From assembly GCF_001194135.2 (NCBI RefSeq), contig NC_068999.1, positions 48,349,562-48,413,561 of the forward strand: a stretch of 64,000 nucleotides of DNA. Reading direction: 5' to 3'. The stretch's first letter is position 1, and every line of letters begins with the position of its first letter. The notes below the pieces were generated by a model, which was given only the letters and a program-made list of their open reading frames with translations, was not told where the DNA came from and did no database searches. The position numbers were made by a program, and so were the translations under genes. Source of the stretch: Octopus bimaculoides (taxonomy: Eukaryota). Shown in pieces: positions 1,782 through 23,912 of the stretch.

Positions 1782-1909
1782 TTACCACCACCACAAAAAT
1801 GGTGACCATAGCATCGACCCAACTAGAGCACCGGTAGCCACGCCCATTGCAACGTCACAGCCAGTATAACGCTGGCGATAAGGTTCTTGTACGTAAATCT
1901 GTCTGGTAC
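1782..1909 (-). CDS. PLEKHB2: PLEKHB-like last coding exon (TRQIYVQEPYRQRYTGCDVAMGVATGALVGSMLWSPFLWWW*)
   Basis: tttttcag|GT ACC...TGG TAA; 128 nt; not in the ORF track. Confidence 0.92.
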
Positions 1910-4900: not shown

Positions 4901-7900
4901 TGCAAACAAATACCACCCCACTCAATCAGTGTAAGCTGTTACCAGTATATTCAACAAGGTGTAAACTTATACCTGTATGTTAAACGAGATGTAAACTTAT
5001 ACCTGTAAATATTCTACTTATGTAGACAGATGTATTTGACTAAATATATGTGTGTCTGTGTACCAAATTTCATAGTGTGTGTGTGTGCACAGTGGAGGCG
5101 CAATGGCCCAGTGGTTAGGATTGCAGCTTCGATTCCCAGACCGGGCGTTGTGAGTGTTTATTGAGTGTTTATTGAGCTCCACGAGGCTCTGGCAGGGGGT
5201 GGTGGCGAACCCTGCTGTACTCTTTCACCACAACTTTCTCTCACTCTCTCTTCCTGTTTCTGTTGTACCTGTATTTCAAAGGTCCAGCCTTGTCACACTC
5301 TGTATCACGCTGAATCTCCCCCGAGAACTACGTTAAGGGTACACGTGTCTGTGGAGTGCTCAGCCACTTGCACATTAATTTCACGAGCAGGCTGCTCCGT
5401 TGATCGGATCAACTGGAACCCTCGAAGTCGTAAGCGACGGAGTGCCAACCACAACCAACCAACCATGCGTGCACATGTGTATTTGTGCACATCTCCCTGT
5501 GTGTTCACATTGACACAACCTGAGCAGCTGAGGCATTTAGTCCCATATAAACAACATATCTCCACAGCCTAGTGGTTGGACATGGCATCTTGGCATAGAA
5601 TAATGCTGCCTCAAGAAATCTCACCCAACTGATGAAAGCCCGGAGAAACTAATGTAATAATAATCCTTTCTACTATAGGCACAAGGCCTGAAATTTGTTG
5701 GTGGGGAAGAAGTCAATTACATTGACCCCAGTGCTCAACTAGTACTTATTTCGTTGACCCCCCCTGAAAGGATGAAAGGCAGGCAAAGTCAACCTCAGCA
5801 GAATTTGAACTCTGAACATGAAGACAAACGAAATACTGCCAAGCATTTCACCCAGCATGCTAATGATTCTGCCAGCTTACCGCCTTATTATTATTAATAA
5901 TAATAATGATAATAATAATGGTGGTATGTGTGTACTTGTCTTTATGGTATACTTACCATAAGGTAAACTATTAACATGATGCACAGAATAGCCTGTTGGA
6001 TACTCATTGGTGGCATATGTTAGAATCTGAGGTTGGTTGTAAAGCTCAGCATAAGAAGGTGGCGGCTCCATGCCTTGGTGATGATCTGGTCGGAATGTGT
6101 CTGAAAATCGTCGAGTTGGGCGAACTGCTCTGGCTTCTTCAATTGCCATTTTCCAAGCACTTTGGTGAAATACAAAAATTATGCAGTTTAATGAATATCA
6201 TTCATCTCATTCAACAAAGCACAAGGTTAACTTTTCTTAATAAGGTGGTGGTGCAGGAGGAATTTAAAAAGCTGATAGAATTTAGAGCAGTGATTCTCAA
6301 TGTGGGGTAAATGCCTCACTTGTTGGGCCTGTGAAAATGGTGATAGGGCATGGTCCCGTAGCTGCCAGGCACGAGGTTCTCAATACAGTGATTCATTTGT
6401 TTTTTTCTTAGTCAATAATGTACTGATTTTTGTACTCAGTACTTAATAAGAGTTACCGGTAGATTCTTTTGTATTAAATCAATGGTTCTCAGCAAGGGTT
6501 CATATGGCCCCTGATAGTCCATATAATATTTTTGGGGTCCACACAATAGTATATTAAGGGTCCATTAAAAAATTTTTGATTCTGATGTATTTACTGGAAG
6601 AAAAAGATAGGGTTCTTTCTCTAACATGTTAAATAGTTAAGCCTACATAAGTTAATTTGTGAAAAACAAAACAGGAGTTTTGAAAGAAGTTTCTATAAAA
6701 CTAGTCTTTAAACATCCAAGAAGCTAAAAGGGGGGGGGGGTCCACCAGAGTAAAACAGTAATCAAGGGTGTCTATAGATTAAAAAATGGTTGAGAACCAC
6801 TGGAATATAATAACTGTGACAAAATATTAAAAATAAAGTTGTTTTTCAATCACTGGTGGGGCATACATATTTATGGAACGTTATAGTGGGGCCTGGGGGA
6901 AAATAGGTTGGGAAACACTGTTTTAGGAGCATTCATTTTAAAGACAACTGAATTCAGAGTATTCTTTAACTGGTTTCACTTAATGTACTTCAGCTATGTC
7001 TAGATTCTGTCTTCTAGTGCCTAAGTCAATTACATCCCAGTCACCCTGGACTCAATTCATTAGTTCAAGGTAGTTGAAATACAATTGGGATGTAATCCCG
7101 GGTGGCTGGTAGTAGCTGTGACTGAGGAGGTACAACAATTTCAAAACACTAGGTGTCTTAAAGTCTCCTTATACTAATAAATTGAATGTGTTATGAACGC
7201 ACATTCACTTCAAAGAAGTTGTTCCCCAATGAGGAAATAGAACAGTAATGATTTATTATCTGTTAGCAGATATCAGTATGCATCAGTAACTAATTTGTTT
7301 GCTGATATATATTTTTTATGATACCCACAAATACTGTATACACATATACACACTCTTTTATTTACGCACATCACTGTATATCATTTATACACATATACAT
7401 ATCTATCTACACAATACACATACATACAGCTTATGCCTGTATATATTTTACTTGTAAGTAGGGGTATTTGACTAAATGTATGCACATCTCCATATATCAC
7501 AAATACACAAATACATAAATATATGTCGTCATCATTGTTTAATGTCCATTTTCCATGTATGCAAGGGTAGGATGGTTCTCAGGAGCTGGCCAGGTAGAAA
7601 AACTACCTATGGCTGCTCTGTGTGTTTTGGAAGGGTTTTTATGGCTGGATGCCCTTCCTAACACCAACCACTCTGCAGAATAGACTTAGGTAAACAAATT
7701 AACTTTAACAGAATGAAATCATTCTATTCGGCTGTTAATAAACATTTTCCTAAATGTAGCAAGTATTATCGAATTTTCACCTTGCATAGAATAAGAACTT
7801 TTCAAATTCGAAAAACATAGCACAAATAATAGCAGCACAAAACTTGAAAAAATTAAATTATTTCTACAAGAAGGAGATTAACTATAACGTAAATATATTA

Positions 7901-9671
7901 TCTAATAGTAACAAAATAAGTCATTAATGTAAATAAAGTCAATAAGGAAAATGATGCAAGGGAAATAACTGGTGAAAATTCTATGCAAGGATCTGAACAG
8001 GTAAACACGTGCTAAAAAGCATAGCAATCTGAAAGGAAGTATTCATACCAAAGATAGTAACCTAAAGCATATCATCATCATCATCATCATCCAGTGTTTT
8101 AAATCCGGGTTTTTTTCCCCCGTTAACAGGGGTGGCCAGAGCTACCTCAATGCCATAAGCAGCCAAGGTAGCCAGATCTACCTTAATGCCATAAGCAGCC
8201 AACTTTTGGGCTGGCTGGCTGGTAACCATTCTCCTTTGCTATCATGAGGCTTTTCTGGAGTTGTATTTTCTACGGGAAGCCTCTGCCCTTGCTTACCCCC
8301 AACCTCAGTTTCTAGACATGTGTGGTCCCAAGACCAAAGCCTCTACCACAATTTTTAAGAAATGCGGTGGAAAACCACTTAGTAACAGCAAAATTAATAG
8401 AGATGTAGTGAACGGTAACAAGAACAAGAGGGAAAATGTTGTTGTCTTTTCCTTCAATAATGGTTGCAGGCGAGATCTCATTATTGTCTCACGTATAGCA
8501 ATGGTTGCAGGTAAGATCTCGCTGTTTTAAAATGGCGCTGGCTTCTTTGTGTTTCGCTACAAACTGATAGTTTATTTATCAATATCAGTTTCCGATAAGG
8601 TGGCGAGCTGGGAGAAACATTAACACGCCAGACGAAATGCTTAGCGGTATTTCATTTGTCTTTACGTTCTGAGCTAAAATGCCATCGAGGTCGACGTTGC
8701 CTTTCATCCTTTCGGGATCGATAAGTACCAGGTGCGTACTGAGGTCGAAGTAATCGACTGACCCCCTCCCCCAAAATTTCAGGGCTTGTGCCTAGAGAAG
8801 AAAAGAATATTAATTTCCGATAACTGTAGATACTACAAGGTATTCATTTATTACCAAGAGTTACTTCCCCTTAACTATTTTACCTTATATTTATTAACAC
8901 CCATCCCCATCCGAGGTATTCTGGAAGTTGATGATAATTAAAAATAGCTGCTGTTGTTGTTTAGCCCCAAGATCAACTCTGACTGAGCAGACCTATTGGT
9001 CAAAGACGTTCTAGTCGGGCCCATCCAGTCTTTTTTCCAGCAAGTGCAATCAAGACTACATAATCCTATCACATCATACAATCTTTTCTATGAAAGAAGG
9101 GTATGGTGTGTTTGAGTGAATTTGAAGGAAAATTTGGCTGCTATTTCTGAGTGTCCACATATAGGGACGTCACTGACTTGCTCTAAAAATAATTTGTTAA
9201 TTATGTACAATGCTTTCTCTCTTTCTCTGAATAACAAAGACATTTGGCTTTGGACAATTGAGACAAATGAATACGAAAAATGTAAAAATATACAGAAGGT
9301 AATAGCTGAGGTTTTTGCTAGGGATTTTAATGTTTAAAATGGATATTTTACCTTGTGTCATCAGAACTTTCTGCACACAACAACAACTTTCTTTCCCGTG
9401 CAACCAATTCTATCAGACAATTGCGGTTCAGGTGTGAAGGAAGTGGGTTGGAAATAGCCACCTAAAAATAGTTGAAGAATAAAGATGAAAGGCAAAGTCA
9501 ACCATGGTGGAATTTGAACTCAGAACATAAAGATATACCTATTATTAGTACTGAAAGAAAGAAAATGGAGAAAGATGGATGTATGAATAATTTATTTGTA
9601 TGATATAAAGATGTTGAAATTAAAAAAAAAAAATAACAATATAAGTAAATTATAAGTTGTAAAGCTCAAAA

Positions 9672-9745
<74 letters not shown>

Positions 9746-10507
9746 AAAAGATATTTTTCATACCTATGAGAGTAACTTCCCTTTTATTCAACGGGGAGGG
9801 GGTTCTTTTTCATAATGTCTATCGTCAAAATAGCTGATGAAAATGCCTCGAAGTTCTTAGCTCCAGCATTTGAACCTCTGAGTTCTATTATGACAACTTA
9901 CTGATTGTCCTATACTATATATATATATATATATATATTAATTCTCTAAATGAAGTATTAACAGTAACTGCACGATAAAGTGAAGTATATTGCCACTTAA
10001 GTGTGGCTGACCCCTAGGGGTGGATGTTACTGTTGCTTTTAGCCCCAGGAGGACATCTCCTCCAGTTGGCTTATCGACACACTACTGTGTCCTGTTTGTT
10101 TTGCCAAGGGAAGTTATCCCTCTCATCTTGATCTGTAGCACGAACGGACCCGGGTTTCAGGGTTATTTCCCTTCGTCAGCGTCCGATAGCCACCGATCTT
10201 CGATGAGAGATACAAATTCTTGGCAACCTTATGTATACTTTTCCAGTGAAATTCTTCACTGATATCGAAGAATTTGTATCTCTCATCGAAGATCGGTGGC
10301 TATCGGACGCTGACAAAGGGAAATAGCCCTGAAACCCGGGTCCGTTCGTGCTACAGATCGAGATGAAAGGGATAACTTCCCTTGGCAAAACAAACAGGAC
10401 ACAGTAGTGTGTCGATAAGCCAGCTGGAGGAGATGTCCTCCTGGGGCTAAAAGCAACAGTAACATCCACCCCTAAGGGTCAGCCACACTTAAGTGGCAAT
10501 ATACTTC

Positions 10508-10538
<31 letters not shown>

Positions 10539-10870
10539 TCCTCTACTTACATAATATCGAGGTCTCATTCTTTTGTTGTCATTTTATTATTATTAATGCC
10601 AACCACTTGACAGGGTGCACTGGATGCTCCTTTTCAAAGCAGTGGCACTAATGAAGTAACTAAGTACTTGCAAGAGACAGGACCTCTCAAACTGAGTGGA
10701 ATGTAGTATTGAATGGGGTGAGCACAAATGACAGGAAAATTGGATGCAAGAGGAATTGGCTGTAGCATGCAAGAGAAGAGATTGTACCAATATGGACATG
10801 TTAGAAGGATAACAGATAGGAAATGATATACCAAGATATCTACGTAAAAGAAAGTTGTGCAAGAGGAAGA

Positions 10871-10903
<33 letters not shown>

Positions 10904-23519: not shown

Positions 23520-23642
23520 TATAGGCGCAGGAGTGGCTGTGTGGAAAGTAGCTTACTTACCAACCACATGGTTCCGAGTTCAGTCCCACTGAGTGACACC
23601 TTGGGCAAGTGTCTTCTACTATAGCTTCAGGCCGACCAAAGC
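23520..23642 (+). mobile_element. SINE family A head, truncated before the gap
   Basis: ataggcgcaggagtggctgtgtgg...ccttgggcaagtgtcttc. Confidence 0.8.
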
Positions 23643-23665
23643 TAAGTGGAATCCCAACCCACCAA

Positions 23666-23793
23666 NNNNNNNNNNNNNNNNNNNNNNNNNNNNNNNNNNN
23701 NNNNNNNNNNNNNNNNNNNNNNNNNNNNNNNNNNNNNNNNNNNNNNNNNNNNNNNNNNNNNNNNNNNNNNNNNNNNNNNNNNNNNNNNNNNNN
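23666..23793. other. Assembly gap (others at 33715-33724, 39449-39458, 40986-41288, 52061-52191, 53911-54022)
   Basis: Runs of N. Confidence 1.
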
Positions 23794-23912
23794 ACTGAAA
23801 GTTTGGAATGCTGATTTTTTTGCCAGAATTGGTATCTCCGTTGCTGAAAACGTCGGAATCTGCAGTAGGAAAAGCAATAGGGGTGGAGTGCATTTGGTAC
23901 GCTTCCGTCTTT

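What the first reader, a model, noticed from the sequence alone, without database searches (positions are those of the whole stretch)
10141..10348. Intact hammerhead ribozyme on the PLEKHB pre-mRNA strand, locked by its own antisense arm; the mirror copy is core-mutated
Seen: the left arm of the foldback reads on the minus strand as a complete type I hammerhead (CUGACGA core, stems I and II, GAAA, palindromic ACCCGGGU stem III, GUC site, predicted cut between 10147 and 10146). The right arm has the same motif on the plus strand but with G8->A at 10315. Established: G8 is essential for hammerhead catalysis, and minimal hammerheads with palindromic stem III are typical of Penelope-like elements and retrozymes and cleave as dimers. 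Inference: the intact copy is in the sense strand of PLEKHB intron 2 and is transcribed after 247 nt of its near-perfect complement, so it should be trapped in a duplex. This looks like a built-in antisense lock that could be released by A-to-I editing, helicases or splicing kinetics. The asymmetry could also be chance decay.
Basis: partly seen in the sequence, partly recalled or inferred. Interest (0 to 1): 0.85.

Follow-up and report, generated by a model that had tools for sequence, protein, structure and literature searches.

The report
Inverted hammerhead retroelement pair in intron
Two truncated copies of a mobile element that carries a hammerhead ribozyme sit head-to-head in an intron of a PLEKHB-like gene; the ribozyme motif is real, but the layout is the usual insertion scar of Penelope-like retroelements, not a regulatory lock.

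Summary
Arms 9975-10221 and 10268-10514 form a 247-nt inverted repeat with 6 mismatches. The left arm, read on the minus strand (10185-10141), is a complete type I hammerhead: 6-bp helix I, CUGACGA, 4-bp helix II, GAAA, palindromic ACCCGGGU helix III, and GUC with the cut at 10147|10146. The right arm has the same motif on the plus strand, with G8->A at 10315. The host PH-domain (PLEKHB-like) gene is on the minus strand, and the foldback lies in its 1706-nt intron 2.

A covariance model built from four published, cleavage-tested retrozyme hammerheads ranks these two sites first and second in the window (E 2.5e-5 and 0.004). Rfam's own hammerhead models do not match.

The layout matches published Penelope-like-element insertions: 3' ends outward, abutting (TA)n; 5'-truncated ends joined in the middle; a 36-nt extra tail on one side only.

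In the pre-mRNA the motif is buried in a -503 kcal/mol hairpin. It also lacks the dimer partner it would need. G8->A is a CpG transition, and a core hit among six substitutions has about 28% probability, so chance decay is enough. No other copies of the family could be retrieved.

Verdict: a new member of a known kind, of low interest.

The parts
9916..9938 (.). Left (TA)n remnant of the target microsatellite
   Evidence: Read directly. (TA)n is a preferred target of Penelope-like elements (PMC8557442), and the enzyme cleaves AT-rich DNA (PMC11167929).
9939..9974 (-). 36-nt segment with no partner in the other arm, lying between (TA)n and the left arm. Candidate Penelope-like-element 'tail', i.e. 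a 3' extension of the left copy only.
   Evidence: It lies outside the inverted repeat. Its size and one-sided presence match the 30-40-bp tail described in PMC8557442, which PMC11167929 explains by two reverse-transcription start sites. This assignment is an inference, because no family consensus is available.
9975..10221 (-). Left arm: a 5'-truncated element copy whose sense strand is the minus strand, the same strand as the host pre-mRNA
   Evidence: 247 nt, 97.6% identical to the reverse complement of the right arm.
10141..10185 (-). Type I hammerhead with an intact core. CUGACGA is at 10179-10173 and G8 at 10174. The predicted cut is between 10147 and 10146.
   Evidence: single descriptor hit in the window; covariance model R1, 25.8 bits, E 2.5e-5, full-length match, no non-standard pairs.
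10113..10213 (-). Extended rod around the hammerhead: helix I continues into three further stems beyond the internal loop UAU/U
   Evidence: Folding.
10222..10267 (.). 46-nt spacer joining the two 5'-truncated ends. It contains its own 7-bp hairpin (CAGTGAA/TTCACTG) and, on the minus strand, a repeat of the arm's first 8 nt (AAGAATTT).
   Evidence: Its origin (an unequal truncation point or junction filler) is not resolved.
10268..10514 (+). Right arm: a 5'-truncated element copy whose sense strand is the plus strand, antisense to the host gene. It abuts (TA)n directly.
10304..10348 (+). Mirror hammerhead with G8->A (10315; CpG->CpA) and a loop-2 A->G change (10326)
   Evidence: 18.7 bits, 7 bits below the left copy.
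10515..10538 (.). Right (TA)n remnant of the target microsatellite
9462..11167 (-). Host intron 2 (1706 nt, GT..AG) of a PLEKHB-like PH-domain gene. It is flanked by exon 2 (11313-11168) and exon 3 (9461-9352); exon 1 is at 12630-12588.
   Evidence: (Pfam PH domain, E 2.5e-9).

Best explanation
This is the scar of one retrotransposition event, or two closely linked ones, carried out by Penelope-like-element (PLE) machinery. The template was a short, non-coding RNA carrying a hammerhead (a non-LTR retrozyme, or a derivative of a PLE pseudo-LTR).

Inferred from the anatomy plus published biochemistry: the endonuclease cut both strands of a (TA)n microsatellite in intron 2 of the PLEKHB-like gene. 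[quoted passage not shown] One cDNA started at the distal site, which gives the 36-nt tail. Both cDNAs stopped short of the 5' end, and their truncated ends were joined through a 46-nt spacer. The result is two copies head-to-head with their 3' ends outward.

Shown here: each copy carries a canonical invertebrate-type type I hammerhead. In the element's own life cycle this motif would process multimeric transcripts by pairing two copies through the palindromic helix III.

Partly shown, partly inferred: in this intron the motif has no function. The host transcript contains only one sense copy, preceded by its complement. It folds into a 247-bp hairpin (shown by folding), is not cleaved (inferred), and is removed with the intron (inferred). 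The G8->A change in the other arm is ordinary CpG decay, or a difference already present in the template. The most likely molecular consequence for the host is that the intronic hairpin is a substrate for dsRNA-binding enzymes such as ADAR, as with any inverted repeat pair.
For: Motif:
- Descriptor scan, 1 hit in the window versus 0.0025 expected.
- An independent covariance model built from published retrozyme hammerheads places both arms at ranks 1 and 2, with all pairs standard.
- The architecture is the one described for canonical metazoan/invertebrate hammerheads (PMC4209133, PMC7229834): 6-bp helix I, an internal loop, 4-bp helix II, and a 2-bp helix III with a palindromic tetraloop.
- The homodimer fold forms the double hammerhead with an 8-bp helix III (-60.7 kcal/mol, against 2 x -27.6 for two monomers).

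Insertion signature:
- (TA)n on both sides, sense strands diverging from the centre, and a 36-nt extension on one side only.
- PMC8557442 describes inverted 5'-truncated copies, a (TA)n target bias and a 30-40-bp tail at one end.
- PMC11167929 shows that the PLE protein cleaves and extends both strands of AT-rich DNA, and that the tail is the stretch between two reverse-transcription start sites.
- PMC4209133 reports dual hammerheads 100-700 bp apart on opposite strands.

No activity expected in the host transcript:
- The foldback minimum free energy is -503 kcal/mol, with 44 of 45 hammerhead nt paired.
- The isolated monomer prefers an inactive fold (-40.8 versus -33.2 kcal/mol).

Decay:
- G8->A lies at a CpG. 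P(at least one core hit among 6 substitutions) = 0.28.
- Intronic retrozyme copies are commonplace: about 43% of copies in Xenopus (bioRxiv 10.64898/2026.07.22.740005).
Against: - No second locus of this family could be obtained: none in the window, no protein-level relatives, and no DNA matches in the metagenome, prokaryotic-genome or viral collections. There is therefore no consensus. The tail assignment, the truncation points and the ancestral state of position 8 are all inferred.
- No PLE reverse-transcriptase ORF was noticed among the window's ORFs of 90 aa or more (read by eye, not scanned against protein families).
- Rfam hammerhead models do not match.
- The 10.1-11.1 pair is A-U, not the conserved G-C.
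- A later inverted duplication of a single copy cannot be told apart from a twin insertion.
- All six arm differences are purine transitions in the element's sense orientation (p about 0.04). This fits differences introduced at the RNA/cDNA stage somewhat better than post-insertion decay.
Confidence: 0.75

Rival explanations
1. The sense-strand hammerhead is a selected, antisense-locked self-cleaving switch in the PLEKHB-like pre-mRNA. A-to-I editing, helicases or splicing kinetics release it, and the antisense-strand copy was inactivated by selection.
For: - The core-intact copy is on the host sense strand and is transcribed after its complement.
- The duplex is a plausible ADAR substrate; inverted repeat pairs are the main ADAR targets (PMC526178).
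- Intronic hammerheads with a proposed role in mRNA biogenesis exist in amniotes (cited in PMC7229834).
Against: - The architecture is fully explained by PLE insertion (PMC8557442, PMC11167929).
- There is no dimer partner in cis.
- The monomer prefers an inactive fold.
- The duplex is about 470 kcal/mol more stable than the ribozyme fold.
- Hyper-editing would probably damage essential core adenosines; the 45-nt motif contains 12 A (inference).
- The asymmetry has about 0.28 x 0.5 probability by chance, and the change is at a hypermutable CpG.
- The arms differ by only 2.4%, so the insertion is young, with no sign of long-term conservation.
- No literature precedent was found.
Confidence: 0.03
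2. The foldback is not a twin retro-insertion. It is either a foldback/MITE-type DNA transposon that happens to carry a hammerhead, or a single retro-copy that was later duplicated in inverted orientation by replication template switching.
For: - Near-perfect long inverted arms with a short spacer are typical of foldback elements and of palindrome-forming duplications.
- TA-rich targets are also used by Tc1/mariner-type MITEs (general knowledge).
- The spacer contains an 8-nt repeat of the arm start, which could be microhomology.
Against: - No direct target-site duplication is identifiable.
- The ends are asymmetric: 36 unmatched nt on the left only. A transposon with terminal inverted repeats should not show this.
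- The ribozyme sense strands point outward, with 3' ends at the AT-rich target, as expected for target-primed reverse transcription on both strands (PMC11167929).
Confidence: 0.12
3. The hairpin itself has been co-opted, for example as a source of endogenous siRNA against the element family or as an ADAR-recruiting element. The hammerhead would be irrelevant to this role.
For: A 247-bp near-perfect intramolecular duplex is predicted in the sense transcript. Such duplexes are known substrates of ADAR and Dicer (PMC526178; general knowledge).
Against: Nothing here shows selection. Being a substrate is a default property of any young inverted repeat. No expression or conservation data are available.
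Confidence: 0.05

Closest known systems
Canonical type I hammerheads of metazoan non-LTR retrozymes (coral, mussel and axolotl; PMC7229834)
   Same: - Same core.
- 6-bp helix I followed by an internal loop and a closing stem.
- 4-bp helix II with a 5-6-nt loop.
- 2-bp helix III capped by a palindromic tetraloop; the mussel motif is ACGCGCGU and this one is ACCCGGGU.
- GC below 50%.
- The motif sits in a highly self-paired unit of a few hundred nt.
- A model built from those ribozymes finds this one.
   Different: - Retrozymes are defined by direct tandem repeats that yield circular RNAs. Here there are two partial units in inverted orientation and no tandem.
- The 10.1-11.1 pair is A-U.
- Loop nucleotides for the tertiary contact were not assessed.
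- No expression data.
Penelope-like element insertions and their pseudo-LTR hammerheads (PMC4209133, PMC8557442, PMC11167929)
   Same: - Inverted 5'-truncated copies.
- (TA)n / AT-rich target.
- One-sided 30-40-nt tail.
- Hammerhead upstream of the 3' end.
- Dual hammerheads on opposite strands a few hundred bp apart.
- Dimer-dependent helix III.
   Different: - No reverse transcriptase / GIY-YIG ORF here.
- PLE minimal hammerheads usually have a longer helix II (6-8 bp), a shorter helix I, a bulged nucleotide after A9, and little or no helix III. This motif is of the canonical type instead.
Conserved intronic hammerheads of amniotes (cited as refs 22 and 25 in PMC7229834)
   Same: A type I hammerhead on the sense strand of an intron of a protein-coding gene.
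   Different: Those are isolated, deeply conserved motifs, not young repeat copies, and are not embedded in a foldback (partly from general knowledge). No conservation can be shown here.
Intronic inverted repeat pairs (e.g. inverted Alu) as dsRNA and ADAR substrates (PMC526178)
   Same: Two retroelement copies in opposite orientation within one intron, predicted to form a long intramolecular duplex.
   Different: The element family is different. Editing at this locus was not tested.

Membership tests
Hammerhead ribozyme, type I | Conserved core: C3 U4 G5 A6 N7 G8 A9 / G12 A13 A14 / A15.1-U16.1 / H17 | tested here: met
   The left arm (minus strand) has all of them. The right arm fails at G8 (A at 10315) with no compensating U3.
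Hammerhead ribozyme, type I | Three helices around the core, with the open end at helix I | tested here: met
   Helix I is 6 bp, helix II 4 bp and helix III 2 bp plus a tetraloop. The descriptor gives a single hit in the window, against 1 hit in 400 simulated windows. No non-standard pairs in the model alignment.
Hammerhead ribozyme, type I | G10.1-C11.1 base pair, highly conserved in natural hammerheads (PMC4209133) | tested here: not met
   The pair is A10.1-U11.1 in both arms (10172/10159 on the minus strand). It is still a pair, but not the conserved one, so activity may be reduced.
Hammerhead ribozyme, type I | Match to the curated Rfam covariance models (hammerhead clan) | tested here: not met
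   No hammerhead match at gathering score or at E<=10 on 701-nt and 76-nt slices.
Hammerhead ribozyme, type I | Match to a model built from experimentally cleaving metazoan type I hammerheads | tested here: met
   Model R1 was built from four constructs in PMC7229834 Suppl. Table 2. Left arm: 25.8 bits, E 2.5e-5, rank 1 of the window. Right arm: rank 2. The calibration is rough, and only 4 sequences went into the model.
Hammerhead ribozyme, type I | Self-cleavage at H17 | not testable with these tools
   Needs in vitro transcription of the monomer, the tandem dimer and the full foldback.
Non-LTR retrozyme (metazoan) | Direct tandem repeats of about 170-400 bp, each with one type I hammerhead | tested here: not met
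   Only two partial units are present, and they are inverted. There is no direct repeat of the unit in the window. At this locus it is a dead derivative at best.
Non-LTR retrozyme (metazoan) | Low GC (below 45-50%), non-coding, highly self-paired RNA | tested here: met
   Arm GC is 0.478. There is no ORF in the sense frames. The arm alone folds to -86.6 kcal/mol with a rod around the hammerhead.
Non-LTR retrozyme (metazoan) | Expressed as circular RNA | not testable with these tools
   No transcriptome data are available.
Penelope-like-element-mediated insertion | 5'-truncated copies, often with an adjacent inverted copy forming an inverted repeat | tested here: met
   The arms diverge from the centre with 3' ends outward. 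Truncation is inferred, since no full-length consensus is available.
Penelope-like-element-mediated insertion | AT-rich / (TA)n target | tested here: met
   (TA)n at 9916-9938 and 10515-10538 flank the insertion.
Penelope-like-element-mediated insertion | Optional 30-40-bp tail at one end only | tested here: inconclusive
   A 36-nt unmatched segment lies at 9939-9974, on the left side only. The size and position fit, but without other copies it cannot be shown to be element sequence.
Penelope-like-element-mediated insertion | Autonomous partner encoding a reverse transcriptase and a GIY-YIG endonuclease in the same genome | not testable with these tools
   None was noticed among the window's ORFs of 90 aa or more, read by eye.

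The most novel reading that the evidence does not exclude
The sense-strand hammerhead is kept silent by its antisense arm and becomes active when the duplex is remodelled by ADAR hyper-editing or helicases, giving conditional self-cleavage of the PLEKHB-like pre-mRNA.

A milder novel reading: the six purine-only differences between the arms were written at the RNA or cDNA stage of retrotransposition by a deaminase. In that case the G8A copy was dead on arrival.
Probability: 0.03. Interest if true: 0.8.

Novelty: new member of a known kind. Interest (0 to 1): 0.2.

Why it matters
It adds one well-formed hammerhead of the retrozyme / Penelope-like-element type in an intron of what looks like a mollusc gene. 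The locus also displays several textbook features of a Penelope-like-element insertion: a (TA)n target, twin inverted truncated copies and a candidate one-sided tail.

It is useful as an annotation and as a worked example of why a good ribozyme motif in a host transcript need not be a host function. If the lock idea were true, it would be a new type of gated natural ribozyme, but nothing here favours it over neutral decay.

Tried and rejected
- Rfam scans of the whole window at gathering score, of 9900-10600 and of 10125-10200 at E<=10 gave no hammerhead family. The only strong sub-threshold hits (MIR869, MIR841, MIR399) simply reflect a long hairpin. They fall far below their gathering scores, and I reject them as microRNA genes.
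- A loose pattern, CTGANGA..GAAA..TC, is not informative: 10 matches against 3.75 expected.
- Searches for further family copies all failed. blastn of an arm against the window found only the partner arm. An exact look-up of the 97-aa ORF that runs through the foldback found nothing. A homology search with it gave 0 hits. Exact-pattern scans of the metagenome, prokaryotic-genome and viral collections gave 0 hits.
- A literature search for the helix III sequence string returned only an unrelated paper.
- The host organism could not be identified. The PLEKHB-like N-terminus finds only one relative, a land-snail protein at 46% identity.
- Similarity between the neighbouring 9744-9914 segment and the arms is marginal (score 27, against a shuffle maximum of 26), so I dropped it.
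- The MAFFT alignment of the two arms with the four published hammerheads (A2) mis-registers helix II. I did not use it for pair counts and relied on the model alignment instead.
- I considered a MITE with a TA or TWA target-site duplication. The apparent flanking dinucleotides are part of the palindrome, not direct repeats, and the ends are asymmetric.

Full report
**1. What is in the sequence**

The region holds a 540-bp foldback. The arms are 9975-10221 and 10268-10514: 247 nt, 98% complementary, separated by 46 nt. A base-by-base comparison gives six mismatches.

Read on the minus strand, 10185-10141 is CGGACG CUGACGA AGGG AAAUAA CCCU GAAA CCCGGG UC|CGUUCG. It has these features:
- All invariant hammerhead core positions are present.
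- Helix I is 6 bp, including one G.U pair.
- Helix II is 4 bp with a 6-nt loop.
- Helix III is A-U and C-G around a CCGG tetraloop, which makes the 8-nt palindrome ACCCGGGU.
- Helix I continues past an internal loop (UAU/U) into GUGGC/GCUAC, GAUC/GAUC and CUCUCAUC/GAUGAGAG. The motif therefore caps a rod of about 100 nt.

The right arm carries the mirror copy on the plus strand (10304-10348), with G8->A at 10315 and a loop-2 change at 10326.

**2. Is it more than chance?**

A loose pattern is uninformative. A full descriptor requires the core, helix I of at least 5 bp, helix II of at least 3 bp, and a palindromic or hairpin helix III. It finds exactly this one site in the window, against 1 hit in 400 simulated 64-kb sequences.

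Rfam 15 gives no hammerhead match at gathering score, or at E<=10 even on a 76-nt slice. I count that as a failed membership test for those particular models.

To get an independent test I took the four retrozyme constructs whose self-cleavage is reported in PMC7229834 (coral, mussel and two axolotl; Suppl. Table 2). I aligned their hammerheads and built a covariance model that excludes the window sequence. I then scanned the whole window on both strands with filters off:
- The left arm is the top hit (25.8 bits, E 2.5e-5, full-length match).
- The right arm is second (18.7 bits).
- All 13 modelled pairs are standard in both, although the helix sequences differ from the model consensus.

The motif is therefore a real type I hammerhead of the canonical metazoan kind. 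One deviation remains: the 10.1-11.1 pair is A-U rather than the strongly conserved G-C (PMC4209133). So 'intact' describes the core, not proven activity.

**3. Host context**

Exons with canonical AG/GT borders on the minus strand are 12630-12588, 11313-11168 and 9461-9352. Together they encode MDYEIMKAGWMHRQSSILHRWKKNWF..., which matches the Pfam PH domain (E 2.5e-9).

The foldback lies in the 1706-nt intron 2, 653 nt from the 5' splice site and 513 nt from the 3' splice site.

The only database relative of the protein is a land-snail protein at 46% identity. The genome is probably molluscan, but the species is unknown.

**4. What the foldback is**

The two element copies have their sense strands diverging from the centre. 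Their 3' ends point outward and their truncated 5' ends meet at the spacer. The right copy abuts (TA)n directly (10515-10538). The left copy is separated from (TA)n (9916-9938) by 36 nt that have no counterpart on the right.

This combination is the published signature of Penelope-like-element (PLE) integration:
- PMC8557442 describes heavy 5' truncation, an adjacent inverted 5'-truncated copy forming inverted repeats, a preference for (TA)n, and a 30-40-bp tail often present at only one end.
- PMC11167929 shows biochemically that a PLE protein cleaves and extends both strands of AT-rich DNA. It starts reverse transcription at two internal sites, and the stretch between them is the tail.
- PMC4209133 had already noted pairs of hammerheads 100-700 bp apart on opposite strands in genomes rich in these elements.

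The ribozyme is of the canonical type found in non-LTR retrozymes rather than the minimal PLE type. Retrozymes are thought to be non-autonomous passengers of PLEs (PMC7229834; bioRxiv 10.64898/2026.07.22.740005). The arm has no sense-strand ORF.

I conclude that this is a twin, 5'-truncated, dead insertion of a non-autonomous hammerhead element. The tail assignment and the truncation points are inferences, because no other family copy could be retrieved.

**5. Would the ribozyme act in the host transcript?**

Folding the minus-strand RNA 10530-9960 gives one hairpin of -503 kcal/mol, in which 44 of the 45 hammerhead nucleotides are paired. The six arm differences appear there as three G.U and three A.C oppositions; G8 itself sits in a G.U pair.

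Even without the antisense arm, the 101-nt hammerhead domain prefers an inactive fold (-40.8 kcal/mol) over the catalytic fold (-33.2). Two copies together do form the double hammerhead with an 8-bp helix III (-60.7, against 2 x -27.6 for two monomers). This agrees with the dimer dependence described for such motifs (PMC4209133). A 2-bp helix III does allow some monomer cleavage in axolotl, 22% in an hour (PMC7229834).

The pre-mRNA has only one sense copy. Cleavage of the host transcript is therefore unlikely on two independent grounds.

**6. The asymmetry**

G8->A is a CpG->CpA change, and 2 of the 6 differences are at CpG. With six substitutions in 247 nt, the chance that at least one falls on one of 13 invariant core positions is 0.28. 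Which arm is hit is a coin toss. G8 is indeed essential, pairing with C3 (PMC11167929), and the right arm has no compensating U3.

Nothing requires selection. An editing-based release would also put the essential core adenosines at risk (inference). I found no precedent for such a lock in the literature.

**7. Verdict**

The identification as a hammerhead of the PLE/retrozyme type is supported. The 'built-in lock' is not supported.

This is a new member of a known kind, in an already described arrangement, and of low interest. The main gap is the lack of other family copies, which a genome-wide survey would close.

Noticed in passing
window 51642-51687 (+): Third-best hit of the hammerhead model (18.6 bits, E about 0.004): UUCCCA UUGAUAA CGACAAAAGAGCUA GAAA CAUUAUG UC UGGGAA. 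It has a perfect 6-bp helix I and a near-palindromic helix III. Its core has U3 and A8, the covariation reported for Schistosoma PLE hammerheads, but helix II does not pair. It is either a decayed hammerhead of another family or chance. No inverted partner lies nearby.
   Followed up: partly
window 10174/10315, 10163/10326, 10129/10360, 10122/10367, 10066/10423, 10014/10475: All six differences between the arms are A<->G in the element's sense orientation, three in each direction, with none C<->T. Given six transitions, p is about 0.036. At the three positions where structure is informative (G8, the extended helix I, and the palindrome CCCCUAGGGG), G is the state that pairs or functions. This could hint at G->A changes made on RNA or cDNA during retrotransposition rather than later DNA decay. 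The sample is too small to conclude.
   Followed up: partly
window 10222-10267: The 46-nt spacer contains its own 7-bp hairpin (CAGTGAA ATTC TTCACTG). On the minus strand it also carries the 8-mer AAGAATTT, which opens both arms. This may be junction microhomology or an unequal truncation point.
   Followed up: no
window 9673-9743 and 9744-9914: A second, longer (TA)n tract lies 170 bp to the left of the insertion. The segment in between contains GAGAGTAACTTCCCTT, which resembles the arm's GAGAGGGATAACTTCCCTT, but the overall similarity is marginal (score 27, against a shuffle maximum of 26).
   Followed up: partly
window 10099-10390: Rfam plant microRNA precursor models (MIR869, MIR841, MIR399) give low E-values but score far below their gathering thresholds. 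This is an artefact of any long perfect hairpin.
   Followed up: yes
window ~40582-40740 and ~54693-54900 (+): ORF fragments with sulfotransferase-like motifs (..[10 protein letters not shown].., ..PRVIKTHLQ..) suggest a sulfotransferase gene on the plus strand downstream of the PLEKHB-like gene. This was recognised by eye and not tested.
   Followed up: no
window ~23560-23880, 37195-37494, 44389-44670, 51917-52059, 54746-55240, 55863-56252: Recurrent short interspersed repeats, seen as similar spurious ORF translations (e.g. ..[22 protein letters not shown].., ..NHMVPGSVPL.., ..QSLVSKFGIRKLKEA..). There are also very abundant (TA)n, (CA)n and other microsatellites, and 694 N of assembly gaps.
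   Followed up: no
window 5877-6149 (-) and 1806-1904 (-): Downstream exons of the PLEKHB-like gene: a PPPSY motif and a hydrophobic C-terminal tail (..GVATGALVGSMLWSPFLWWW*). Both fit an evectin-type, tail-anchored PH protein.
   Followed up: partly
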